Positions 50,307 through 64,000 of a stretch of 64,000 bases of DNA are shown piece after piece; position 1 is the first letter of the stretch, and each line of letters starts with the position of its first letter. The stretch is from NCBI RefSeq assembly GCF_964204865.1, contig NC_135259.1:12834001-12898000 (forward strand). Direction: 5' to 3'. Below the pieces are notes generated by a model. It was not told the origin of the DNA. It saw only the letters and a list, made by a program, of their open reading frames with translations, and did not search any database. The position numbers and the translations under genes were made by a program. Source of the DNA: Styela clava (Eukaryota).

Positions 50307-52495
50307 AGACATAGCTATTTTAGTTGAAACTAATCGGAATCGCAATTTTAGAACATAGCCATTTAGGACTTTGCCATTTAAGTAGGGACATAGCCATTTT
50401 AGTAGAGATATAGACATTTTAGTAGGAATATAGCGGACATAGCCATTTTAGTAGGGACATAGCGGACATAGTCATTTTAGTAGGAAAATATCGGAGTCGT
50501 AATTTTAGATGGGACATAGCCATTTTAGTAGGGACATAGCCATTTTAGTAGGAAAATAGCGGACATAGCCATTTTAGTAGGGACATAGCGGACATAGTCA
50601 TTTTAGTAGGGACATAGCGGACATAGTCATTTCAGTAGGAAAATATCGGAGTCGCAATTTTAGATGGGACATAGCCATTTTAGTAGGGACATAGCGGACA
50701 TAGTCATTTTAGTAGGGACATAGCGGACATAGTCATTTTAGTAGGAAAATATCGGAGTCGCAATTTTAGATGGGACATAGCCATTTTAGTAGGGACATAG
50801 CGGACATAGTCGTTTTAGTAGGGACATAGCGGACATAGTCATTTTAGTAGGAAAATATCGGAGTCGCAATTTTAGATTGGACATAGCCATTTTAGTAGGG
50901 ACATAGCGGACATAGCCATTTTAGTAGGGACATAGCCATTTTAGTAGGGACATAGCGGACATAGTCATTTCAGTAGGAAAATATCGAAGTAGCAATTTTA
51001 GATGGGACATAGCCATTTTAGTAGGGACATAGCGGACATAGTCATTTTAGTAGGGACATAGTCATTTTAGTAGGAAAATATCGGAGTCGCAATTTTAGAT
51101 GGGACATAGCCATTTTAGTAGGGACATTGCGGACATAGCCATTTTAGTAGGGACATAGCGGACATAGTCATTTTAGTAGGAAAATATCGGAGTCGCAATT
51201 TTAGATGGGACATAGCCATTTTAGTAGGGACATAGCGGACATAGTCGTTTTAGTAGGGACATAGCGGACATAGTCATTTTAGTAGGAAAATATCGGAGTC
51301 GCAATTTTAGATTGGACGTAGCCATTTTAGTAGGGACATAGCGGACATAGCCATTTTAGTAGGGACATAGCCATTTTAGTAGGGACATAGCGGACATAGT
51401 CATTTCAGTAGGAAAATATCGAAGTAGCAATTTTAGATGGGACATAGCCATTTTAGTAGGGACATAGTCATTTTAGTAGGAAAATATCGGAGTCGCAATT
51501 TTAGATGGGACATAGCCATTTTATAGGGACATAGCGGACATAGCCATTTTAGTAGGAAAATAGCCGACATAGCCATTTTAGTAGGGACATAGCGGACATA
51601 GTCATTTTAGTAGGAAAATATCGGAGTCGCAATTTTAGATGGGACATAGCCATTTTAGTAGGGACATAGCGGACATAGCCATTTTAGTAGGGACATAGCG
51701 GACATAGTCATTTTAGTAGGGAAATATCGGAGTCGCAATTTTAGATGGGACATAGCCATTTTAGTAGGGACATAGCGGACATAGCCATTTTAGTAGGGAC
51801 ATAGCGGACATAGTCATTTTAGTAGGGAAATATCGGAGTCGCAATTTTAGATGGGACATAGCCATTTTAGTAGGGACATAGCGGACATAGTCATTTTAGT
51901 AGGAAAATATCGGAATCGCAATTTTAGATGGGACATAGCCATTTTAGTAGGGACATAGCGGACATAGCCATTTTAGTAGGGATATAGCGGACATAGCCAT
52001 TTCAGTAGGGACATAGCGGACATAGTCATTTTAGTAGGGAAATATCGGAGTCGCAATTTTAGATGGGACATAGCCATTTTAGTAGGGACATAGCGGACAT
52101 AGCCATTTTAGTAGGGACATAGCGGACATAGTCATTTTAGTAGGGAAATATCGGAGTCGCAATTTTAGATGGGACATAGCCATTTTAGTAGGGACATAGC
52201 GGACATAGTCATTTTAGTAGGAAAATATCGGAATCGCAATTTTAGATGGGACATAGCCATTTTAGTAGGGACATAGCGGACATAGCCATTTTAGTAGGGA
52301 TATAGCGGACATAGCCATTTCAGTAGGGACATAGCGGACATAGTCATTTTAGTAGGGACATAGCGGACATAGTCATTTTAGTAGGAAAATATCGGAGACG
52401 CAATTTTAGATGGGACATAGCCATTTTAGTAGGGACATAGCGGACATAGCCATTTTAGTAGGGACATATGGGACATAGCCATTTTATAACTACCC
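50307..52495 (-). repeat. Right foldback arm: modular tandem repeat, inverted relative to the left arm
   Basis: Reverse complements of the same 20-, 9- and 28-bp modules, with internal higher-order duplications of 435 bp and 318 bp. Confidence 0.95.
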
Positions 52496-52589
52496 CCTAA
52501 GTTAAGTTACTGTTTGCTGGTTTGCAATTCAGTGCTTTGATAGCACAGTAGCAACAAGCCCATCTTGTTGACTTGAGTTAACTTAGGCT

Positions 52590-52830
52590 TTGCCTGTTTG
52601 TGGTGTGACGTCATGTGCTAAGTCTGTAAGTGTTGAAAATAAGCTCACCACCGACTGACCCAACCTCAGATTATCCTGCCTGGGTTCGAATCCCATGCGG
52701 CATTAATTATGTGCAAGACGACTGCTGGCCTCCTCACCACCGGCTTAGTGTCAGAGTGTGGTTTGCCATATGATTAAGCTGATAATAGGCTTTCCTCTTC
52801 CCTGGAATAAATTTTTTAAATCCTATCATG
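52590..52830 (+). mobile_element. tRNA-derived SINE copy (internally deleted)
   Basis: B box GGTTCGAATCCC (~52683) and tail CATATGATTAAG...TAAATCCTATC, as in the other copies. Confidence 0.6.
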
Positions 52831-52911
52831 AATTTTGAATTTCAGTTTGGAATAGGCCTATATGTTATATCTGTATATAGCCTAATATCTTAGTATTGTA
52901 GTAAACAAAGC

Positions 52912-54780
52912 ATGAGTGGGAGAAATTTACGTGACTTCGTTATTAGTCACAGAACTCAATATCAAGATGGAGAAGAACAAAAGCACTTGGTTACTAGAAT
53001 GATGATGGGAATGGACAGCAATCGATACAAAAAAATCAATTACGAAGAAGCCAGAGAGGCTGCCTTCAGATTTAAAGACAATGCAGTTGCCACAGGTGCT
53101 CGATTAAATCATTTAAAAAATCGTGCACGTATTGGTAAAGAAAGACAACTAGTGAAACAACATTATCCAATTTGGCGTGAATCACATAAAGAATTACGAG
53201 ATCATTTACGAGGAGCTGAATATGTTTATCAGTCTGTTTTTTCTGATTTGATAAAATCGTTGTCAAATATTGGGTATTTAGATTACGCAAGTGATTTAGA
53301 GCAATGCGACTCTGAAGTTGACGCTGAAATAAAGAAGTTTTCACAAGCGATTATTATGCCTATTCAACAATTGATCAATGATCTTAAAATAAGATTACAT
53401 CGCGGGACAAGTGGCCCGAACATTCACGAAAGTTTAAAAGAAGATGTTGATGACATAATGAATGAAATTGACTCTGTTAAATCTCAGTCATTATCTGTAG
53501 GAAAATGGCTTTCCCACCAGCAAATGATTTTGGAAGGAGACTTAGAAAAAGCTGATATCATTAGCAATGATGCTTATCCATCATTGCCACCAGTAGAGTC
53601 TGCCCTCCCAGTAGGGATTGTTCTTGCTGAATGCCCTGATACAGAATTAAAAAGCACTATTTTGAGACAGTTCATTGACTTACATACCAACTATAATAGG
53701 CGTTTGAAGGAAGAACTAGCTCGCTTACAAGGTGCTGAAAGTCTTTTTTCAAAATCAAAAGACAAAAGTTGGATATTTTCTGTGGTTTATGATCTTTATC
53801 ATCGTCATATTTCACCCCAATCAAGAGAAAGTCTTCATTTTTTAATTATTGACATGCTCGCTCATCTTATATCGAAAAATAACAAGAGTGAAATTCTAGA
53901 ATTGGAGTCCCATTTTTTGAAACAACGTTATTCAAAAAAACATTGTGAACTCTTGGTTTCAAATTATAACAGAGATTTCGGAAATTTAATATCCAATTCA
54001 TTATCTGCATTTGCGGAAGCACGACATGTTTATGCAAATGCTGACATTGCTGCAAAAGATCGAGCCAAGCAAAGAAAAATTTGTGCTGCATTGCATGAAA
54101 AGGTTATTTCCCTACGAGCAAAACAAGAGGAAATCCTTCAACTGGAAGCAGAACTGGAAGAGAGAAGTAGAAGAAAACACTTTGAAGAAGAAGAAAAAAG
54201 ACAATGGTTGGAAAACGAACGAAGATACAGAATGAAAAAAGAAATTACAAAATATCAACGACAAAGAAAAGCGATGGAACAACAAAAACAAATGGAACAA
54301 GAGAAACGACTACAAATTTTAAAATCAGAGATTGAAAACCAGAGAAAAATTGACCAGGAAAGAGTGAATTATCGTGCTGAAAAAATCAAGGAAAGGAATG
54401 AAATTCAAGCCATTAAATTGAAAGCAAAAATTGAAGATGAAATTTTGAAACAACAAAGGCTTGATAACTTGCGACAAACTGTCGCAGTTGAAGCTAAATT
54501 TGATCCTGAGCGTTTAGTCGCTGATACTATATCCAGTAAAGCACGACAGGGTATTGGGACAAATGAAGAAGTTTCAATTCAAGCTCCGTTATTTGATGTA
54601 CATGGGTATTCTCAAAAACAAATTGAAGGAGATGTCAGATTGAGAGTTGAAGCTGCACTGAGAAATGCTGGAATACATGAATCTGAATATGCTAGACGTG
54701 TTTTATCAAATATACCTCCTCCTACACAGCCAAGAAGGGATACTGATTCAAGTGCTTTGCAGTACATGTTTAAAAACTGA
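52912..54780 (+). CDS. CCDC148: Coiled-coil domain-containing protein 148, single coding exon, 622 aa
   Basis: Uninterrupted ORF. N-terminal RYKKINYE..KERQLVKQH..IW, long charged coiled coil and C-terminal VAVEAKFDPERL..PLFDVHGYS..DVRLRVEAALRNAGIHESEYAR..PPPTQPRRD resemble vertebrate CCDC148. AG acceptor at 52900-52901; AATAAA at ~54976 and ~54992. Confidence 0.88.
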   Translation: MSGRNLRDFVISHRTQYQDGEEQKHLVTRMMMGMDSNRYKKINYEEAREAAFRFKDNAVATGARLNHLKNRARIGKERQLVKQHYPIWRESHKELRDHLRGAEYVYQSVFSDLIKSLSNIGYLDYASDLEQCDSEVDAEIKKFSQAIIMPIQQLINDLKIRLHRGTSGPNIHESLKEDVDDIMNEIDSVKSQSLSVGKWLSHQQMILEGDLEKADIISNDAYPSLPPVESALPVGIVLAECPDTELKSTILRQFIDLHTNYNRRLKEELARLQGAESLFSKSKDKSWIFSVVYDLYHRHISPQSRESLHFLIIDMLAHLISKNNKSEILELESHFLKQRYSKKHCELLVSNYNRDFGNLISNSLSAFAEARHVYANADIAAKDRAKQRKICAALHEKVISLRAKQEEILQLEAELEERSRRKHFEEEEKRQWLENERRYRMKKEITKYQRQRKAMEQQKQMEQEKRLQILKSEIENQRKIDQERVNYRAEKIKERNEIQAIKLKAKIEDEILKQQRLDNLRQTVAVEAKFDPERLVADTISSKARQGIGTNEEVSIQAPLFDVHGYSQKQIEGDVRLRVEAALRNAGIHESEYARRVLSNIPPPTQPRRDTDSSALQYMFKN

Positions 54781-55986
54781 TATGTTCCAAAGTTTTGACT
54801 TAACTGTTTGCACCTAACATTAAAATTTATTGCAGGCTCACGAGTTATTCGCACCAATGTAGAATAGTATAGAATAGTGTTGGTAGGGAAACAAGCTCTG
54901 AGTGCTTCAAATGAATTGTTATTTTGTAGAGAATTATTTCAAAGTACTTACTCAATTGGCAAAGCAGTATTTAAAATAAAATCTTGTCTCAAATAAACAG
55001 TTGAAGGATTTGAATGTCACAATGATAATATTGCATTTATATAAAAGTCGCGCAGTAGTATCGCCTACTGGTTATATTTTTTTAATCTTTAGGCCAGCAG
55101 CCATCTTTTGTGTTTCAGAATTTCAAGCTGTACCTGTTTTAATTTTGATCGCAGGTATTTCATATGTCCATATGAAGATTATGACTGTTAGAACTGATCT
55201 ATTGCAAAATGCGATCTTCTCAAAACTTTAAAATATGACACAAGGTAATTTGGTTTGACTGCGCCGCCGATATTCTGTCTGCTGATTGTTTGGACCTATG
55301 GATGTATCATTTTGCAAAATTGTTGTTCATGGGTATTCATGTTGTTGTTGTTGTTATAAGGACTAACTATCAAAATATATGCTTTCAAATTTCTTTTGTC
55401 TCAAATATTGCTGGCATTGGGAAAATTCCACTTTCATAATTCCACCCAGCTTTTGCCCGATAAAATTTAACGGTACCTTCCTATGCCTAATTTTTACATT
55501 TTAGTTTATTTGTGAAACTTGAATCTATCACATTTTCAGCCATTTAGTATAATATATGTGTATCCTATTTCTATCTTTTTCATTGATATGTGTTATTCAT
55601 ATATTACGATTGACGTTAAAGTAATGTTAAGTGTTTTGCAACATTTTAATTTAAAAATGAATTTAGAATTTTTTTCAACAAACTATTATATTAAATATTT
55701 TACAAGTCCTAATTGTGTGTTGCCAGATTTTTATTCCTTAATGAGCTATGAAGTTATATTTAGGTTAGTTTTCATATTAATAGGTTATATGGTACAATAT
55801 TTTGTTAGTATTCGTTTGTATTTTATCTTTTGTAACGTTATTGTTTATTCTCTGTCACTGTGCTATTAGTAAACACCGTAGTGTAGGATTCAGCAATTAA
55901 TAAAGATCGTATTTATATATTTTAGATCTACATAATTAAATAAAAAATTAAACATTTAAATTTGGTTACCCATATACCTGAAATTA

Positions 55987-56546
55987 ATGGATGATATCGA
56001 CCTCGTTCAAGAGGTCAAAAGTGTAGCAGAAGAAATTCGATTTGTCGTCGATAAAGTTGTCATTGATGCGACTGATCCTTACTCGTTTACTGTTACAATT
56101 AAAGAAGGAGTTACATTTCATCTCAGTTTGAGTAGCAGAGGATTTCTTGTTGAAAATCAATCTCAAGGTGATCCAAACACTCAATCGGAAGTAATCATAC
56201 TCAAAGGACAGTGTTTCGAAACTATTTATGCTTTTCTTGATAAAGCAAGTCCAGCTTACAGGTTAGAATTACAAATTACTGTATCTAATATTGTTATTAT
56301 TATTAATAAATATTTAAATTGTTCATTATGTTAATATTATATTTATTGATTTATTGAAGTATTTCGATTCATATCAAGTATACTTTATATGAGTGCCATT
56401 ACATGAATTCAAACATTCCTACTCGCAATGAATCTTACATTGTTAAATTCTTTAAGACAAAACATATAACTTATGTCCAAATTTTTTTTAGAGTTGCATT
56501 TGTTCAAGACATTTCAAAAAAACTGAACGCAATTAGTGAAGGATAA
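55987..56546 (+). CDS. GSKIP: GSK3-beta interacting protein (DUF727), 2 exons, 109 aa
   Basis: Exons 55987-56261 and 56492-56546 (GT-AG, phase 2). The spliced C-terminus FETIYAFLDKASPAYR|VAFVQDISKKLNAISEG* matches human [30 protein letters not shown]; also VTIKEG..LSLSSRGF. Confidence 0.88.
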
Positions 56547-59500
56547 TGGCTGAAAACAAAGAAACCATAAAAGATAGACTTCGAAGCCTCCTCAACTTAA
56601 ACAAAGGTGGTGCAGTGTCTAAAACTGCCCCTTCTACCACTAACAAGCCGGCAATAATATCTGACGAGTTCTGGTTAGACATTGGAGCATCGTCACCACT
56701 CGAACAAAGAATTGAAAAAATTCGTGAAGCAATGAAGTTGGTTGAATCTGAAGTTCTTCAAGATTCTGTGATTAAAAAATTATGGATCGAAACTAAAGAT
56801 CTTCTTCAGCCTAAAATGAATCAAGAAGTTCGATTGTTTGAACTTGAATTTGTTCGGAGCATTGTCAAGGTAAATGATTTGTATTTAGAGTCATTTACAC
56901 ATAACTTAGACTTAATACTCCAAGCTCTTTATTTCTCCAATTCCTGGTTGACAAAAGTTTTGGTTCTGACTCTAATCGCAGGTTAAAAGTAATTTTGACT
57001 CAAGTTTTCAGTGCCTAGGGCTAGGAGACTATTCATTTTGTTTCTGTTGGAGCTACTACCTTCAGAAATACCAGGATCCTTGAAGTTTAGCCCTCCCTAT
57101 CCAAAATATTACACCCTGGGCATGATGTTCGATATAGAGATTTTCAATTTGTTATGCCAACATACTTAGGTCCAATACTCTTTAACTACTCAACATTCAG
57201 CAATCTCTTCCATAATTTGGTGACATAGGGATAGGGTAAAAAGAAGGATGGCATTAGTATAACATACTCTAGGTCAGTGTTTCCCAACCTATGGATCGCG
57301 ACTCAAACTGGGTTTTCTGCAAATTTACTTGAGTCGCTTGTTTTTTCAACAAAAACCCAAGAGTTTCTAATTTTAAAGTGTAGCTCAATAGTAATTGTAT
57401 ATGTGGGATGGGAATTATTATCCGTAAAAACTTGGCAGAATTCATTTTGCTCAGTAAAGCCACGCCACCCACCATTTTCCCTGATGACAAACAAGTGCTG
57501 TCTTCTCATTTTGGGGTAATTTCTGTCGAAATAAATGTTATGTAAAAAGGATTGTTTCGTTAAGTTTGCTGCCATAAAGATACTACATGTCATTTAGTAT
57601 TTGGGCATGTCCTTGGGTCGCAAGCTTTTACAGAATTTATTTCAAAAAAATTTGGGTTGCTTGAAAAAAGGTTGAGAACCACTGCTCTAGGAACCAGTAT
57701 ATTCATTTCTCGTTATTAACTCAGATTGTTATTATATTTTAGGGTCAATATCGTCGATTAGGAATGTTACGAGCTATGTTCTTTCAAACATTACAAGAAC
57801 ATAACATTCCTGAAGACGGCTCAGCTATTATACAAACATTTGAAACACTCAGTGACAATGGAAAAGACGTAGAATTTTTTGACCAAGAAGTCGGTCCGCT
57901 ACTTCTTCATTGGCTTGCAACAATGAGAGGAAACGTGACGTTACTTTCACTTCTTGTGAATATTATAAAGTATAATTCATCTTACTTGGATCAAGAGTTT
58001 ATCGTTAAAATTTTGGAATTGATTTGTGATCTTTGTAATTCTCAAACACCGGAAAAGGAAAAAGATCTAGGCCTGCAGGTAATAATCTTAAATCTTTTCT
58101 GCTACGTTTTACCTATATTGTTATAAATTACCCTAACCTAGTTGATGGTGAGTTTTTTTTCCCAACTTTGTCTCATACACGGCCGCAAGTTCTCTCTGAT
58201 GTAAAGTTAAACTCATTTGTAGAAGAATTTTCATGCTTCGAAATCTCCCGAAAGTATGTGGACATCCACAATATTATTTTCAACTAAATATTCCATGTCC
58301 AGTTCTTGCTTGCTGTTGTGGATTATATGACTCTGCTATAATTGATTCAAAACGCTAAATGGCTGCAATTTCACCTCGCAGTGTATATTCGAGCCAGCGC
58401 TATGGATGTGGTGACTTGGTGCATATTTCATTGTAGAATTTTGATTGCTGTGTGTTCAATTTCATTTTTGTCGAGTTGTATCTGAAAATCTTCTCTTTTT
58501 TAGGTGGATGAATTTTTTTGAAATATCTTTTCCCAATGCCAATAAATTTTAATGCTATTTCAACCTAACTTCTTTGTTTATTAAAATACTCTTTTTCAAC
58601 CATATGGCACAATCGACTTTACAAAATTTTTCAAATAGTTTTTCACTCTTATTACCCAGTATTGCCACAGATTTTTATTTATGCTAGAACCACTTGAATG
58701 TTTGAAAAAAACAAGCCGTAGCATAGTTATGCACTTGATTGCCAGCACACGTCATGTGCAGCTTTCTTCAAAAATCCTCCCGAAATCAAACATTCGGTCT
58801 CTATACCGGCCGCTCGGCCCCATAGCCTTCTACATAATAGGCCATTCAAATGATGATTGTGGCCCACCCTATCCCTAATTCATAACATTCTTTCATAATT
58901 ATAATTATAAAGAGAATTTTACAGCAATAATCTTTTTTGATTTATTAAACCCTCTTTGATTGAATTTAAAGAAGTTTTTTGCTGTCGTACAATCAATATA
59001 TTACGATTTGTTATCGATTTACCCGTAATATCCTTTTCTTTTTAGGTTGTAGATGCAATTATATGCTACAGCTCCCTTCCACATGAATCTCTTTATTCTG
59101 TGACTGTTATGTTGTGTCGTGTATTGAATCTGAAAAAATTTTGTAACGAGAGTTGGAAGTTGATGAGAAAACTACTAGGAACTCATTTAGGACACAACTG
59201 CATCTCAATCATGTGTCATATCCTTCAGGTAAAAATTATTTATGCATTTTGACTTCGAATATGGCTCGTTGAGAGGCAGAATATTTTGGGGTTAAGATGA
59301 TTTACTTCATTCATTTGATATTATTCACCTTGAGTTTATAGTCATTTGCTAGGCCTAGATTGACTTGCTCGAATCAGAATTTCCAAACTCTCCATGATCA
59401 TATGCTTTGATTAGTGAATTAAAACCCAATGGGGAAAATCATCTACTGTATATCCTTGCATATAAGCCGATCTTGCATATATAAGCTGACCCTCTAAAAA

Positions 59501-62500
59501 CGGCCTTAAAACTGTGAATTTATAAAAATTTGCATATAAGCCGATCACAGACTGTTATTGCTGTCATAGCATAAACATACAAGCGAACCATGCTCTTATT
59601 TTGAGAACATAGCCTGGTTCGAGTTGTAACCGTTGGAAATGAGTTAGCTTAATGACATTTTGTTTGAGTGCGATCAGAGTTATGCTTGTATAAGCTGTAT
59701 ATATGATACACATTAGCCATATGACAACTGAACGTCGCATAGTGAAGTTGCCATGTTGGTTCTATAGATAACTTTGACTAGATAGTATTAATCTCAGACA
59801 TAAAACTTGCTTATGATTGGATGTATAACACACTTAACTATATTTTATGTATTATAGAATCCGAAGATGTTACCTGAATGGCCGCTTTTACGAAGTGCGG
59901 TATTTTTCATTGGTATGGGATTGTGGGGATCTGTGAGAGTCAAATCCTTGAAGCACACTTCACAATCTGTTCTACCGTCGTTTCATTGCGCTCTTCATAC
60001 CAAGAATTTGGAACTGGCTTTTGAAGTTACTTTAACTATCCAGAGATTAGTACGAAAATATGGTCATGAGTTGCAGGTGCTTGCTAACTTTCTGTTACAG
60101 CATTTTAGGTGGTAACTCCTGTGTGTACCAGGTTAGGGTTAGGCCATGATTTTATTCCGATTCTCTTAATTTTTGTTCTTTTACGAGTTCGGGGACTGTC
60201 TGTGTTAGCCAAGTGAATATATTCCCTTCCCGTAGGCTTCAGTCCCTTTACACAACTTGGTGTAAAGTAGGCGAACAAAATTAGTTACCTCCAATCTCCA
60301 TATTGGTTGGTATCTTTTGTGACCTTTTTGCAACCTTGCTTTTGTTCGATCTTTTTCTCTTTTAGTACAATAAATGCAAAGTTATTGTCCTATAAGTATT
60401 TTACAATATATTGTCTTGTCATGATACTGCCGAAGTTGAATGGTTCGATTCCATAGTCATACATCAAATTTATTTGTCAAATGAAAATTATTTTCAATCA
60501 CTTTTTTATATTTATCATGGGGAGGGGAAAGGAGATAAGGTGACCTAATCATATGGCAAATCACAGCATCGAGTCTGGCCACCTATCCAGATCGTGCATG
60601 GGAGTAGTTAACCATTTTTTCCCTTCAAATGCATGAATGGTATAGAATACAACAAATTGTCAGTCATTTGGATAAATCCCCCAATGCCTGTTGCAAGTCT
60701 TTTTTCTGGTTTAAAAATTTCGAAAAGTATGATTATTTCTACTTTAGGCTGGAACTTGGGATCACGTTCTGGACATTGTTAGTTCTCTGTTAGAACTTGT
60801 CAATGAAAATTCAACAAAAACTCAAATTCCTGCCATGATTTCTCTAAAGAAAGGAACTCATGATCTGATAACTTTTATTGAACAATTAATTGAAACGGAA
60901 CTCTACGATGGCCCGATTGAAAGATTGTTTTCAATTACTGATAGTTGCGCTAAAGATCGTCCAAATGATTCTGTGTTCATGCTGATAGCTTATAAATCTC
61001 AGGTTTGTTGTGAATGATAATTATGGAATTTAAGGAATCTTTGGTTGAGGAAAATAAAAAATATAAAATTTCAGATTACATTTAATTTCTAAGAGGACAG
61101 TTGCAATCTTTTACTTATATATATCTCTTGATTTTTACTCAACTGTGTTTAAAATTTGGCTTTTTGTTTGTATGAATTGTTTCTTGCGCAGAATCTTTTC
61201 CCGAAAGATAATTAAAAACAGTTAATCAGGAATTTTGGTTTTCAAAATTTGGTCTCTTGTCTAAATGACATGTCATAAAGCCACTTTGAGAAAAACGTAA
61301 TAACTGTCAATTAACAGTTAAATGATATAATTAGGTCTTGTCGAATTAAAATGGTATTTTATATGAAGCCTTTTTTTGAGAAAAGATGTAAAAATTGTCA
61401 ATCAGGCTGGCTATTTGTGGCCCAGCAGGCAGTCCGATGTGGTAAAATTGAAAATATGTTTTTATGCAATATACAGTGAGAAGAATTGTATTTTTTGAAA
61501 AGAATAGAGAATTGAAAAAATTCCTCCAGGACACTTCTATTGCGCAAGAGGACGAAATATTCATAACCGATGTAACACAAAAATTAAAAATAGAAAATTA
61601 CTTCTGCGTCATCCTACCACAGTACCTTTAGATCTGACAGGGGCAAACTACCGCTCAGGGGCCAAGGGCCAGTTGGATAATTCAATCTGGCCCGCCTGGT
61701 GCTGCCACAACCAAATTTTGATGTTTAGTTAAAAAAAATAGCTCAAGAAATTTGTTGAGAATGCGTTCAAATTTAATTTTGGCACAAGGCTTGTTGTTTT
61801 CCACTTTTACTTTGTTAATATTGTTCATAAAATGTAACTTTATGCACACTTACATGGTCGTCAGTCTAGGTGGGCACAATTTTTGGCCCCCGGTCCGAAA
61901 ACCTTGCTCACCCCAGCTTTATATAAAGGCAATATTTAATTTGTTTGTGTTGCATCTCCTTTTAGGCAATAAATCCTACGAAACAGAACTGGTTGTCCAG
62001 TCTTCTCATGCTGTTGAATAATTATTATACGAAAGAATCAAGAACGCCTGTCAGATTAAAAACGTTGGAAGTTCTCTACTCTGTCACAGAATCTTGCATG
62101 GAACTTTATGAAGATGTATGTATGCTTTGTATAAATATTGAAAAATAAAAGAAAACTATTCAAAAAATATATTTGTTGTGTTTTCTTAACTGCAATTCCA
62201 AGCGATCAAGGAATGCGGCTAGAAATAAAATTTTGTTAAGAGCACATTTTCTGCTCGTAAGCTTCTTCCATTTGCAGTGATGGGCTCTGCTGAACACAAT
62301 GTGACCTCAATTCTTCAGTATTCAAATTATTCGCTGGAAAATATTTTGTAATATTAGGTATTCTAAATTGAGCCGCATGAGGTAATACAGGGTTCCCGCA
62401 AAACAAATTGTATATTGGAAATTCAGAATTACTTTATCCCGTATTTTGATATCTTGATTTTAGGAATATCAGCCACAAAAATGCAAAAAATTAAAATTAC

Positions 62501-64000
62501 GGAAAAATTTCAAATATATTAGGATGGAGTATTTCGATAGAAAAAAAAACACAGAATTGCGTAATATTTTAAAATTGAAGCAGTGGGCTTGAAAATTATC
62601 CTGGGCTAATAGAGTTCTGTTTATTAAATTTATTAATTCTTCCCTGACATATAGGCTACTCTCTTTACCATCTCTTTTTTTTCTAAATTTTATGAAAAGA
62701 TTTCTCATATTTCAATCTTTTTTAGGAACTAGTATCAGAAGTTTTGTTGAATTGTTTTTCTGACTTGAATGTTGAAACTGATTTGATTGTCAAAACCAAA
62801 GCTGTTCAGCTCATTGTCAACTCCTGTCTTCTTGCCAATGAAAAATGTCCAGAACTCTTTGCATCACTCAGAAATGTACTAGATGGTGATTGGATACGGA
62901 GAGGTACTACTAACAATATAAATTGAATATAGTAAATAAAACTTAACCGAAAGACAGAAAATAAGGTAGCTCAACCAACAGTATGTATGTCTATGAAGAC
63001 AGACTCAATCAGGACAATGAATATAACCCGTTGTCATTGCTCATAATTGCACATCCTGGAATTGCTTACATTTTCAAGACTTTCGACCTTATCAAAATTT
63101 TATTTAAAGTTCAGTACCCGATTTATAGTTTATTGTTTTTTAAAATGCAGCTATGAACAGAAAATCTGAAAAGTCATCTTCCGACTTCTTAACTGACATT
63201 GAAGAATTAGTTCTTGGACTTGTCAAAACTTTTAAAAAGAAAATGCCAAGGTATAATATTGTTTTTATAGTTTTTGTCCCAACACAAAGCATAACCAATA
63301 CTTGTCTGTATTTTTATCAAGGAATCTTTCTTATGGTGTTTGTTCAAAATATCTGGCAGTAGGTTTATTGTTTTAGTCTCTGGGAGGTATTTTCTTGTCA
63401 ATCCTTAGGTAATGTACCGCACCCCGATTCAACCCTTTTGCGGCGACCCATCAAAGACCGCACCCCAATTCAACCCTTTTGCGACCACCCATCGAAGACC
63501 GCACCCCAATTCAACCCTTTTGCGACGACCCATCGAAGATTATCTTATATATTGGTATGGTATACTCATGTATCATTATTTAAACTTATCTTCTTTCAGA
63601 TTATTTTATTAATTTTAATGGTTTATATTTTATAAAGTGCATATCCGTCAACATTTGAATATTGCATATAAATATCATTGGATAATTTTTTAAATAAAAA
63701 TTAATTTTCGAATTTTTGTCAGATATCCAGGTACTCACACAGTTGAAGCGTTTAGCTTACTCACGTTATATTTGCAACTTTATTATACTTCGGATAATAT
63801 TGAAAAGATTTCTAACTGTTTGACAAAAAGTAGAAAGAAGACTTTTGAATTGTTGCTGTCATTAAGAGCTAATGAGAAAAAACAACTTTGCATGAAAAAT
63901 TCTCAAGTGAGTCAATTTTTTTTTCTAACATAATTTCTAAGCATTCTCCAACTGGCTCTTATATAATTACAAATACAGTGTTGCTATAAAGTCGCACACC
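56546..64000 (+). CDS. TSC2: Tuberin, N-terminal part (continues beyond the window)
   Basis: Exons 56546-56869, 57743-58078, 59046-59228, 59858-60076, 60748-61002, 61966-62115, 62726-62903, 63151-63250, 63723-63906 and probably 63979-end. LWIETKDLLQP, GMLRAMFF, LLVNIIKYNSSYLD, DAIICYSSLP, WKLMRKLLGTHLGH, LLRSAVFFIGMGLWG and IQRLVRKYGHELQ are tuberin signatures. Confidence 0.95.
57275..57684. mobile_element. hAT MITE in TSC2 intron 1
   Basis: TIR CAGTGTTTCCCAACCT / AGGTTGAGAACCACTG; TSD CTCTAGGT / CTCTAGGA. Confidence 0.85.
60108..60292 (+). mobile_element. Short interspersed repeat with GGTAACT...AGTTACC ends
   Basis: Homologous to 32641-32830 (reverse) and to the arm of the 1194-1434 MITE (GTGTACCAGGTTAGGGTTAGGCCAT). 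Confidence 0.7.
61634..61916. mobile_element. Degenerate hAT MITE
   Basis: TSD-like CTTTAGAT / CTTTATAT around decayed GGGCAA / TTGCTCACCCC ends, with GGCCC subterminal motifs. Confidence 0.55.
63416..63538. repeat. Minisatellite, 41 bp x 3
   Basis: ACCGCACCCCRATTCAACCCTTTTGCGRCSACCCATCRAAG three times in a TSC2 intron. Confidence 0.9.

What the first reader, a model, noticed from the sequence alone, without database searches (positions are those of the whole stretch)
55987..56869. GSKIP and TSC2 share one exon, with overlapping stop/start codons (TAATG): a candidate coupled GSK3-TSC2 dicistronic unit
Seen: after the intron 56262-56491, the exon starting at 56492 first encodes the last 18 codons of GSKIP, ending GGA TAA (56544-56546). 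The last A of that stop is the A of the TSC2 ATG (56546-56548; strong context, A at -3 and G at +4). There is no intergenic base, so no room for a separate poly(A) site or promoter. The 54 nt between the acceptor and the TSC2 ATG contain no ATG, and the TSC2 frame is closed just upstream (TAG TGA). The shared exon carries the F...L helix equivalent to the GSK3-binding segment of human GSKIP. Established: GSKIP binds and inhibits GSK3-beta, and GSK3-beta phosphorylates TSC2 to restrain mTORC1, so the two proteins act in one pathway. UAAUG overlaps mediate termination-reinitiation in viruses and bacteria but are very rare in animal nuclear genes. Tunicates resolve operons by SL trans-splicing. 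Inference: either (a) the AG at 56490-56491 is a dual-use acceptor, where cis-splicing completes GSKIP and SL trans-splicing (or a promoter in the intron) gives a TSC2-only mRNA, making the two products mutually exclusive per transcript; or (b) one mRNA makes both by stop-start reinitiation. Pure leaky scanning is less likely because three out-of-frame ATGs lie in the GSKIP CDS.
Basis: partly seen in the sequence, partly recalled or inferred. Interest (0 to 1): 0.9.

Follow-up and report, generated by a model that had tools for sequence, protein, structure and literature searches.

The report
GSKIP and TSC2 share one exon
In the sea squirt Styela clava the small GSK3-binding protein GSKIP ends, and the growth regulator TSC2 (tuberin) begins, in one shared exon with overlapping stop and start codons (TAATG). 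RNA assemblies run through both genes, so this is a real and unusually tight tunicate operon junction, but how TSC2 gets translated is still untested.

Summary
GSKIP has two exons (55987-56261 and 56492-56546). Its TAA (56544-56546) shares one A with the ATG (56546-56548) of tuberin/TSC2. Both models equal NCBI's Styela clava proteins. The TSC2 N-terminus (MAENKET...) is conserved in relatives, so this ATG is the ancestral start.

RNA-like contigs from three studies join 56261|56492. Contigs from two of them also run through TAATG into TSC2 exons 2-4. The GSKIP 5' end lies at an AG acceptor, 20 nt after the AATAAA of an upstream CCDC148-like gene. That looks like a Ciona-type operon junction, so the unit is probably three genes long.

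Matching Logan contig lengths suggest that GSKIP and TSC2 also sit on one RNA contig in two further species.

The mechanism remains inferred. The two mature mRNAs must overlap or be the same molecule. I favour SL trans-splicing competing with cis-splicing at the 56492 acceptor (0.45). Translation from a bicistronic mRNA (0.2) and a promoter inside the intron (0.2) are the main rivals. No TURBS motif is present.

A GSK3-TSC2 "coupling" purpose is unsupported.

I class this as a new variant of a known kind.

The parts
52912..54780 (+). Single-exon 622-aa coiled-coil ORF, CCDC148-like. Probably the first gene of the transcription unit.
   Evidence: ORF list. No hit in the local Pfam copy. ESM Atlas feature hits to CCDC148 clusters at 0.96, a lead only. 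RNA contigs cover its 3' part.
54781..55923 (+). Transcribed 3' tail or intergenic stretch of the upstream gene. It ends at AATAAA 55899-55904.
   Evidence: Contigs of X1, X3 and X6 tile 54500-55904. Depth there is at or above GSKIP-intron depth.
55924..55925 (+). AG acceptor-like dinucleotide at the 5' end of GSKIP RNA, 20 nt after the AATAAA. Candidate SL trans-splice site of a Ciona-type junction.
   Evidence: The 3848-nt X3 contig starts here at its 2nd letter, and its 1st letter does not fit the genome. The upstream tract is T-rich. The pattern matches PMC1488885.
55926..55986 (+). GSKIP 5' UTR, with no ATG.
55987..56261 (+). GSKIP coding exon 1: 91 codons plus 2 nt. The start AUG is in a weak context (T at -3, G at +4).
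56262..56491 (+). GSKIP intron, 230 nt, GT..AG, with a T8 tract before the AG. It would be the outron if TSC2 is trans-spliced at 56492.
   Evidence: A 230-nt skip is seen in contigs of three studies. Acceptor pyrimidine fraction is 0.75.
56492..56546 (+). Shared exon, GSKIP part: the last 18 codons plus TAA. They encode F95 and L103, which align to human GSKIP F122 and L130. The same 54 nt would form an AUG-free leader for TSC2.
56544..56548 (+). TAATG: the GSKIP stop and the TSC2 start share base A56546.
   Evidence: RNA contigs of X1, X3 and X6 cover it with no difference listed at this place; 62 further differences were not shown.
56546..56869 (+). TSC2 (tuberin) coding exon 1, residues 1-108. 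It contains ATTAAA at 56771, a possible GSKIP poly(A) signal.
57743..58078 (+). TSC2 coding exon 2
   Evidence: Joint 56869|57743 in X3 and X6. DUF3384 at 3.9e-18. Exact match to P0003.
59046..59228 (+). TSC2 coding exon 3
   Evidence: Joints in three studies. Exact match to P0003.
59858..60077 (+). TSC2 coding exon 4. The 3' boundary was not fixed, because the contigs leave the laid stretch here.

Best explanation
This is a genuine polycistronic (operon-type) transcription unit of the ascidian Styela clava: CCDC148-like gene, then GSKIP, then TSC2.

At the second junction the usual zero-length tunicate intercistronic boundary has gone negative. The last GSKIP coding exon is also the first TSC2 exon, and the GSKIP stop shares one base with the ancestral TSC2 start codon.

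A complete GSKIP mRNA must reach at least 56546, and a complete TSC2 mRNA must begin at or before 56546. One precursor molecule therefore cannot be cut into two complete non-overlapping mRNAs.

Most likely the strong acceptor at 56491|56492 is used in two ways:
- Cis-splicing to the donor at 56262 completes GSKIP. That RNA carries TSC2 sequence as its 3' part.
- SL trans-splicing, treating GSKIP exon 1 plus the intron as outron, yields a TSC2 mRNA with a 54-nt AUG-free leader in front of a strong AUG.

Shown here: the anatomy, the cis-splice, RNA continuity into the TSC2 exons, and the ancestral status of the start codon.

Inferred: that linkage is kept in two other species (from matching contig lengths), SL use at 56492, where GSKIP mRNA ends, and that the two products are mutually exclusive per transcript.

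The pairing of a GSK3 binder with a GSK3 substrate is probably incidental.
For: - The sequence anatomy is confirmed.
- Both models equal NCBI's S. clava proteins.
- The TSC2 N-terminus MAENKE(T) is conserved from residue 1 in relatives, and human tuberin aligns from about residue 11. The ATG at 56546 must therefore be present in TSC2 mRNA.
- Contigs of three studies join 56261|56492. X3 (3848 nt) and X6 (1358 nt) contigs continue through TAATG and splice at 56869|57743, 58078|59046 and 59228|59858.
- The stretch between the upstream ORF and GSKIP is transcribed up to AATAAA 55899-55904. The GSKIP contig starts at AG 55924-25, with one non-genomic letter before it. This is the Ciona pattern, in which poly(A) is added at the acceptor AG of the downstream gene (PMC1488885).
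- In Ciona an SL has been seen joined to an internal exon-2 acceptor of an operon gene, and per-transcript mutual exclusivity was already proposed (PMC1488885).
- The 56491 acceptor has the best pyrimidine tract (0.75). The AGs at 56536 and 56541 are poor (0.35).
- The 54-nt leader has no AUG.
- Linkage in relatives is inferred from equal Logan contig lengths. GSKIP P0002 and TSC2 P0113 are both on 5750-nt contigs. GSKIP P0114/P0115 and spliced TSC2 fragments P0006/P0116 are on 1766- and 3628-nt contigs.
Against: - No SL-56492 junction was seen. Contigs cannot show 5' ends, and the loose-end table was swamped by a repeat.
- I could not identify an SL RNA gene in this genome with the Ciona SL sequence.
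- An upstream donor normally favours cis- over trans-splicing at an acceptor (established for nematodes; my own knowledge).
- The GSKIP 3' end is unknown. There is no poly(A) signal between 56492 and 56546, and no RNA depth at 56900-57099 in TSC2 intron 1.
- A GSKIP stop followed by many exon junctions should trigger nonsense-mediated decay, unless the mRNA ends inside the shared exon. This is inference.
- In Botryllus, a styelid, a linked gene pair gave a joint transcript but no SL on the downstream gene (PMC3691228).
Confidence: 0.45

Rival explanations
1. One mature bicistronic mRNA serves both proteins. Ribosomes reach the TSC2 AUG by leaky scanning past weak upstream AUGs, by reinitiation after the short out-of-frame ORFs, and/or by stop-start reinitiation at UAAUG.
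For: - Contigs from two studies run from the GSKIP 5' UTR through TSC2 exon 4 and beyond. The same is inferred for two further species.
- The GSKIP AUG and the three out-of-frame AUGs all have U at -3. The TSC2 AUG has A at -3 and G at +4.
- The out-of-frame ORFs are 11, 21 and 22 codons long and all stop before 56546, the last at 56524.
- Dicistronic mRNAs with small CDS overlaps are known in Drosophila (PMC4528330).
Against: - A contig spanning two genes does not prove a single molecule, as itself states.
- There is no UGGGA (TURBS motif 1) in the 150 nt before the stop-start.
- Reinitiation after a 109-codon ORF is normally inefficient (established knowledge).
- Out-of-frame AUGs are not depleted relative to synonymous resampling (P = 0.5). 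The U at -3 pattern is a post-hoc observation.
- Tunicates have SL trans-splicing, which normally resolves such units.
Confidence: 0.2
2. These are ordinary overlapping genes without trans-splicing. TSC2 has its own promoter inside or near the 230-nt GSKIP intron, or in GSKIP exon 1. GSKIP mRNA is polyadenylated inside TSC2 exon 1 or intron 1, for example after ATTAAA at 56771. The through-contigs are then assembly merges of overlapping transcripts or read-through.
For: - ATTAAA at 56771 lies in the shared exon.
- De Bruijn contigs merge overlapping transcripts (caveat stated).
- In Botryllus, joint transcripts of two linked genes were judged likely to be read-through, and the downstream mRNA lacked an SL (PMC3691228).
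Against: - RNA depth in the intron is very low (0.6-3.9, against 13-73 in the exons).
- 230 AT-rich nt is very little room for a promoter.
- The upstream junction looks like an SL-operon junction.
- No poly(A) loose end was listed near 56790-56830, although most loose ends were not shown.
Confidence: 0.2
3. The operon is resolved at an acceptor downstream of the GSKIP stop, and TSC2 is made from a downstream Met (M63 or M91). The overlap would then be only apparent.
For: AGs exist at 56560, 56572, 56576 and 56585. In-frame Mets exist at codons 63 and 91.
Against: - Residues 1-62 are conserved in relatives from the first Met (MAENKET..., IISDEFWLDI...) and align to human tuberin residues of about 11 onward. 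This shows purifying selection on translation from 56546.
- NCBI's model uses this Met.
Confidence: 0.03
4. The overlap is an assembly or annotation artefact.
For: None was found.
Against: - DNA-type runs hold 85-100% of the sampled words.
- RNA contigs of three studies cover TAATG, with no difference listed at that place.
- The independent NCBI models agree.
- GSKIP is single copy.
Confidence: 0.02

Closest known systems
Ciona intestinalis/robusta SL-resolved operons without intercistronic DNA (Satou et al. 2006, PMC1488885; Satou et al. 2008, PMC2760879)
   Same: - Same-strand tunicate genes abut directly.
- The upstream mRNA 3' end coincides with the acceptor AG of the downstream gene. The CCDC148-like to GSKIP junction here looks like this.
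- Dicistronic cDNAs are seen.
- The authors already argued that upstream and downstream mRNAs may be mutually exclusive per transcript.
- An SL was seen joined to an internal exon-2 acceptor in one operon.
   Different: - In Ciona the mRNAs abut but the coding regions do not overlap.
- Here the stop and start codons share a base, and the candidate trans-splice acceptor is also the cis-acceptor of the upstream gene's last intron. The two mature mRNAs must therefore overlap by at least 55 nt if the 56492 acceptor is used.
- SL use was not shown here.
Caenorhabditis SL1-type operons (little or no intercistronic sequence; cited in PMC1488885)
   Same: The poly(A) site of the upstream gene lies next to the trans-splice site of the downstream gene. 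Expression may be mutually exclusive.
   Different: A different phylum and a different leader, and no CDS overlap. Nothing about them was tested here.
Drosophila dicistronic genes with multiphasic CDS overlap (FlyBase 'rule-benders', PMC4528330)
   Same: Two conserved proteins are encoded on one transcript, with small overlaps of the two reading frames. 18 pairs share coding sequence in different frames, most by less than 40 nt. The downstream ORF is thought to be translated by resumed scanning or internal initiation.
   Different: Drosophila has no SL trans-splicing, so bicistronic translation is the only route there. In Styela an SL route is available and is more likely.
Viral termination-reinitiation at UAAUG (calicivirus and influenza B TURBS type; my own knowledge)
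   Same: The same pentanucleotide stop-start overlap.
   Different: The TURBS motif UGGGA is absent from the 150 nt upstream. The upstream ORF is a cellular gene, and no 18S-complementary element was identified.
Botryllus schlosseri fuhc-sec / fuhc-tm pair (PMC3691228)
   Same: Two linked genes in a styelid ascidian, with capped and polyadenylated joint transcripts detected by PCR and mRNA-seq.
   Different: There is a 227-bp spacer and no CDS overlap. The downstream mRNA lacked an SL, and the authors favoured read-through.

Membership tests
GSKIP (Pfam PF05303 GSKIP_dom) | Significant match to the GSKIP domain | tested here: met
   Exon 1 scores 7.1e-9, 36 bits, against a cut-off of 20.9. The protein is 99% identical to NCBI's S. 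clava 'GSK3-beta interaction protein-like'. It aligns to human C14orf129/GSKIP 1SGO, residues 5-107 to 32-134.
GSKIP (Pfam PF05303 GSKIP_dom) | C-terminal SPAYR..F.......L helix, the GSK3-beta-binding segment (human F122 and L130; the function is from my own knowledge of the literature) | tested here: met
   SPAYRVAFVQDISKKL aligns to human [16 protein letters not shown]. F95 and L103 lie in the shared exon. Binding itself is not testable here.
Tuberin / TSC2 | N-terminal DUF3384, Tuberin and Rap_GAP domains, with the N-terminus homologous from Met1 | tested here: met
   DUF3384 on exon 1 (5.6e-4) and exon 2 (3.9e-18). The exons equal P0003, 'tuberin-like isoform X1 [Styela clava]', which carries PF11864, PF03542 and PF02145. 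The N-terminus is conserved.
Tunicate SL-resolved operon (Ciona type) | Same-strand neighbours with an intercistronic distance of 0 to under 100 nt | tested here: met
   The CDS distance is -1 nt for GSKIP/TSC2. For the upstream pair, AATAAA 55899-55904 is followed by AG 55924-25.
Tunicate SL-resolved operon (Ciona type) | Evidence of a polycistronic precursor | tested here: inconclusive
   Contigs from two studies span GSKIP and TSC2, and contigs tile the upstream intergenic stretch. However, contigs can merge separate molecules.
Tunicate SL-resolved operon (Ciona type) | The downstream gene's mRNA carries the spliced leader at an AG acceptor | not testable with these tools
The S. clava SL sequence was not identified.
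Tunicate SL-resolved operon (Ciona type) | The upstream mRNA is polyadenylated at the downstream gene's acceptor AG, so the two mRNAs abut without overlapping | tested here: not met
   For GSKIP/TSC2 this is impossible by sequence logic. No AG lies between the stop (56544-46) and the ATG (56546-48), and any acceptor at or before 56546 would cut off the GSKIP stop. So this is a variant, not a canonical member. For the upstream junction the pattern is compatible.
Termination-reinitiation (TURBS type) | Stop-start overlap or close proximity | tested here: met
   TAATG at 56544-56548.
Termination-reinitiation (TURBS type) | An upstream UGGGA motif complementary to 18S rRNA, within about 100 nt | tested here: not met
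   No TGGGA in the 150 spliced nt upstream.
Leaky-scanning bicistronic mRNA | Few and weak AUGs upstream of the second ORF, with AUG depletion | tested here: inconclusive
   All four upstream AUGs have U at -3. The number of out-of-frame AUGs is what synonymous resampling predicts (observed 3, mean 3.4, P = 0.5).

The most novel reading that the evidence does not exclude
Across ascidians, TSC2 is translated mainly from a conserved GSKIP-TSC2 bicistronic mRNA. Ribosomes reach its AUG only after passing or terminating on the GSKIP ORF, through UAAUG reinitiation and leaky scanning past AUGs with U at -3. TSC2 output would then be translationally tied to GSKIP translation. This would be a chordate nuclear example of functionally coupled stop-start translation between two members of one signalling pathway.
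Probability: 0.12. Interest if true: 0.85.

Novelty: new variant of a known kind. Interest (0 to 1): 0.55.

Why it matters
Tunicate operons are known for having no intercistronic DNA, and how one precursor yields both mRNAs is still an open question. Here the coding regions themselves overlap and share an exon. One molecule therefore cannot give two complete non-overlapping mRNAs. The cell must either choose between cis- and trans-splicing at one acceptor or translate a bicistronic mRNA.

That makes the locus a clean natural test case for operon resolution in a chordate. It appears to be kept in at least two other species, and it involves a gene (TSC2) whose dosage matters for mTORC1 control.

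If the unchecked scan notes on similar pairs hold, overlapping cistrons may be a general feature of this genome. That would matter for annotating tunicate genomes.

Tried and rejected
1. The look-up of encoding contigs on the relatives' GSKIP proteins, to read the junction in other species. The stop/start overlap therefore could not be examined outside S. clava, and only co-residence on contigs could be inferred from equal contig lengths.

2. Looking for the S. clava SL RNA gene with the Ciona leader taken from PMC1488885.
- With 2 mismatches, the hits are near the control count, apart from an array on C3:24.85-24.96 Mb.
- That array turned out to be a tRNA-gene array with an ATTTGCAT-containing upstream element, not SL RNA.
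- A pattern of leader 3' end plus GT plus Sm site gave only chance-level hits.
- Rejected as uninformative. This is not evidence against trans-splicing.

3. Loose ends at 56492 (SL) or poly(A) ends for GSKIP. The read-laying table showed only the loose ends of a dispersed repeat at 60120-60293 and hid 440 others. All the runs are contigs, which cannot show ends.

4. AUG depletion in GSKIP as a signature of leaky scanning. Not significant.

5. TURBS motif. Absent.

6. Rfam scan of 52000-64000. No hit.

7. Literature search for GSKIP in tunicates, or for overlapping stop/start in tunicate operons. Nothing found. Matsumoto 2010 and Ganot 2004 are not held.

8. Joined exon sequences were used only inside local scripts, for counting AUGs. 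Full-length searches used the database proteins P0001 and P0003. The joined-model search step was left out.
Full report
**What is there**

The window is Styela clava DNA (G000:C13:12834001-12898000). The GSKIP exon is 99% identical to NCBI's 'GSK3-beta interaction protein-like' of Styela clava (P0001, 109 aa). P0001 has the same splice and the same C-terminus...SPAYRVAFVQDISKKLNAISEG.

- ATG at 55987; exon 1 runs to 56261.
- GT..AG intron at 56262-56491, with a T8 tract before the AG.
- Exon 2 starts at 56492 and gives 18 more codons, then TAA at 56544-56546.
- The last A of that stop is the A of an ATG (A at -3, G at +4) that opens a 108-codon exon ending at 56869|GT.
- The TSC2 frame is closed just upstream by TAG TGA.
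- There is no ATG in the 54 nt after the acceptor.
- Three out-of-frame ATGs lie in the GSKIP CDS.

Pfam calls exon 1 GSKIP_dom (7e-9). It calls the two following exons the tuberin N-terminal domain DUF3384 (5.6e-4 and 3.9e-18). Human GSKIP (PDB 1SGO) aligns over residues 5-107. F95 and L103 fall at the positions of human F122 and L130, and both are encoded by the shared exon.

**Is the TSC2 start real?**

A full HMMER scan with exon 1 found P0003, named by NCBI 'tuberin-like isoform X1 [Styela clava]' (1610 aa). It matches residues 1-108 to 1-108 at 100%. Exons 2-4 in the window match it exactly.

In every full-length homologue the match starts within the first 10 residues. The N-terminus MAENKE(T) is nearly invariant in the closest relatives and still recognisable in Phallusia, amphioxus and Xenopus. 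Human tuberin aligns from about residue 11.

The ATG at 56546 is therefore the ancestral start, and a downstream-Met reading is very unlikely.

**RNA evidence**

No listed run is on record as RNA. Nine runs from three studies hold 41-55% of the sampled words, which is about the exonic share. Their contigs show clean GT..AG skips.
- Contigs from X1, X3 and X6 (three studies) join 56261|56492.
- The X3 contig (3848 nt) and the X6 contig (1358 nt) continue through TAATG and splice at 56869|57743, 58078|59046 and 59228|59858.
- Intron depth is low (0.6-3.9) against 13-73 in the exons.
- Depth in 56900-57099 (TSC2 intron 1) is zero.

The exon sharing is therefore real at the RNA level, and the overlap is not an assembly error. 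DNA-type runs hold 85-100% of the words, and GSKIP is single copy.

The limit, stated by the tool itself, is that a contig across two genes does not prove one molecule, and contigs cannot show 5' or 3' ends. The loose-end table was filled by a dispersed repeat.

**Context: an operon**

Upstream, on the same strand, lies a single-exon 622-aa coiled-coil ORF (52912-54780). It is CCDC148-like by Atlas features, which is only a lead.

Contigs tile the 1.1 kb after its stop, up to 55904, at depths at or above those of the GSKIP intron. AATAAA sits at 55899-55904. Twenty nt later is a T-rich AG (55924-25). The long X3 contig begins exactly there, preceded by one letter that does not fit the genome.

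This is the junction described for Ciona operons, where poly(A) is added at the G of the acceptor AG of the downstream, SL-trans-spliced gene (PMC1488885). About 20% of Ciona genes lie in such operons (PMC2760879). The unit is therefore probably CCDC148-like, then GSKIP, then TSC2.

**Conservation**

The protein collection reports contig lengths, and these pair up:
- A GSKIP 75% identical to the Styela one (P0002) has a longest contig of 5750 nt. A 1614-aa TSC2 in the cluster of P0024, which is 86% identical to the Styela TSC2 (P0113), sits on a 5750-nt contig.
- A more distant GSKIP (P0114/P0115, 41% identical) is on contigs of 1766 and 3628 nt. Spliced TSC2 N-terminal fragments (P0006/P0116, 46% identical) are on contigs of 1766 and 3628 nt.

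Three length coincidences make co-residence of the two ORFs on one RNA contig likely in two further species. Whether the stop and start overlap there is unknown.

**Mechanism**

By sequence logic, a complete GSKIP mRNA must extend to at least 56546, and a complete TSC2 mRNA must start at or before 56546. The canonical Ciona resolution gives abutting, non-overlapping mRNAs, so it cannot apply. This defining feature is not met, and the junction is a variant.

I favour alternative use of the 56491|56492 acceptor (confidence 0.45). It has the best pyrimidine tract (0.75), whereas the AGs nearer the ATG are poor (0.35). SL joined there would give an AUG-free 54-nt leader. Ciona provides a precedent for SL joined to an internal cis-acceptor, and for per-transcript mutual exclusivity.

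Bicistronic translation (0.2) is not excluded:
- All four upstream AUGs have U at -3.
- The three out-of-frame ORFs (11, 21 and 22 codons) end before the TSC2 AUG.
- Against it, there is no UGGGA TURBS motif, and AUGs are not depleted beyond expectation (P = 0.5).

An intronic promoter, with GSKIP polyadenylated after ATTAAA 56771, is a third option (0.2).

By inference, a GSKIP stop followed by many exon junctions would invite nonsense-mediated decay. This favours a GSKIP 3' end inside the shared exon, or else ribosomes that continue into TSC2.

**Comparison and novelty**

The kind is known: tunicate SL operons without intercistronic DNA. The variant appears not to be described in the papers I could search. 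It consists of overlapping coding regions and a last-intron acceptor that doubles as the downstream gene's 5' boundary.

Stop/start or small CDS overlaps on dicistronic mRNAs are not very rare in animals. FlyBase lists 159 dicistronic pairs and 18 pairs with shared coding sequence.

The GSK3-TSC2 pathway link is background knowledge and was not tested. Unchecked first-stage notes on this genome list other tight or overlapping pairs: LYRM7/CINP with a shared exon, VMA21/SNX25, ADAT2/GLO1 and ZNHIT1. This suggests a genome-wide style rather than a pathway-specific device.

Joined sequence was used only in local counting scripts.
- The SL RNA gene of S. clava was not identified.

Noticed in passing
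window 60120-60293 (TSC2 intron after exon 4): A dispersed repeat of about 174 bp, with at least 1749 first-look candidates in the genome at about 90% identity. Its summed RNA-contig depth is 3e4-1e5, and many different flanks are attached. It looks like a SINE or MITE. There is no Rfam match.
   Followed up: partly
window 57300-57700 (TSC2 intron 1): A stretch with RNA-contig depth of about 18-53, while the rest of the intron is at or near zero. Odd joints link it to the 60120 repeat region. It is probably another repeat or transposon fragment.
   Followed up: no
window 52912-55925: A single-exon 622-aa coiled-coil ORF, CCDC148-like by Atlas features only. Its transcribed tail of about 1.1 kb ends at AATAAA 55899-55904, right before the AG where GSKIP RNA begins. 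This is a candidate first cistron of a three-gene operon.
   Followed up: partly
G000:C3:24847563-24961794 (locus L008 = C3:24912000-24917000): A large tandem array of tRNA-like genes (GTGGCCGAGCGGTCTAAGGCGCTGG...). More than 80 copies are listed. About 50 nt upstream of each copy examined in L008 lies ATTCTATTTGCATAAG, which contains the octamer ATTTGCAT and by chance resembles the Ciona spliced leader.
   Followed up: partly
window 56508-56694: Run X10, labelled as a different organism (B), holds a 188-nt contig with only 2 differences from this Styela sequence. This points to carry-over between samples or a mislabelled or very close relative.
   Followed up: no
window 56157: An in-frame 6-nt deletion polymorphism in the GSKIP coding exon, seen in the contig of run X6. 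Several single-base variants occur in GSKIP exon 1. None is listed in the 54-nt shared segment 56492-56545.
   Followed up: no
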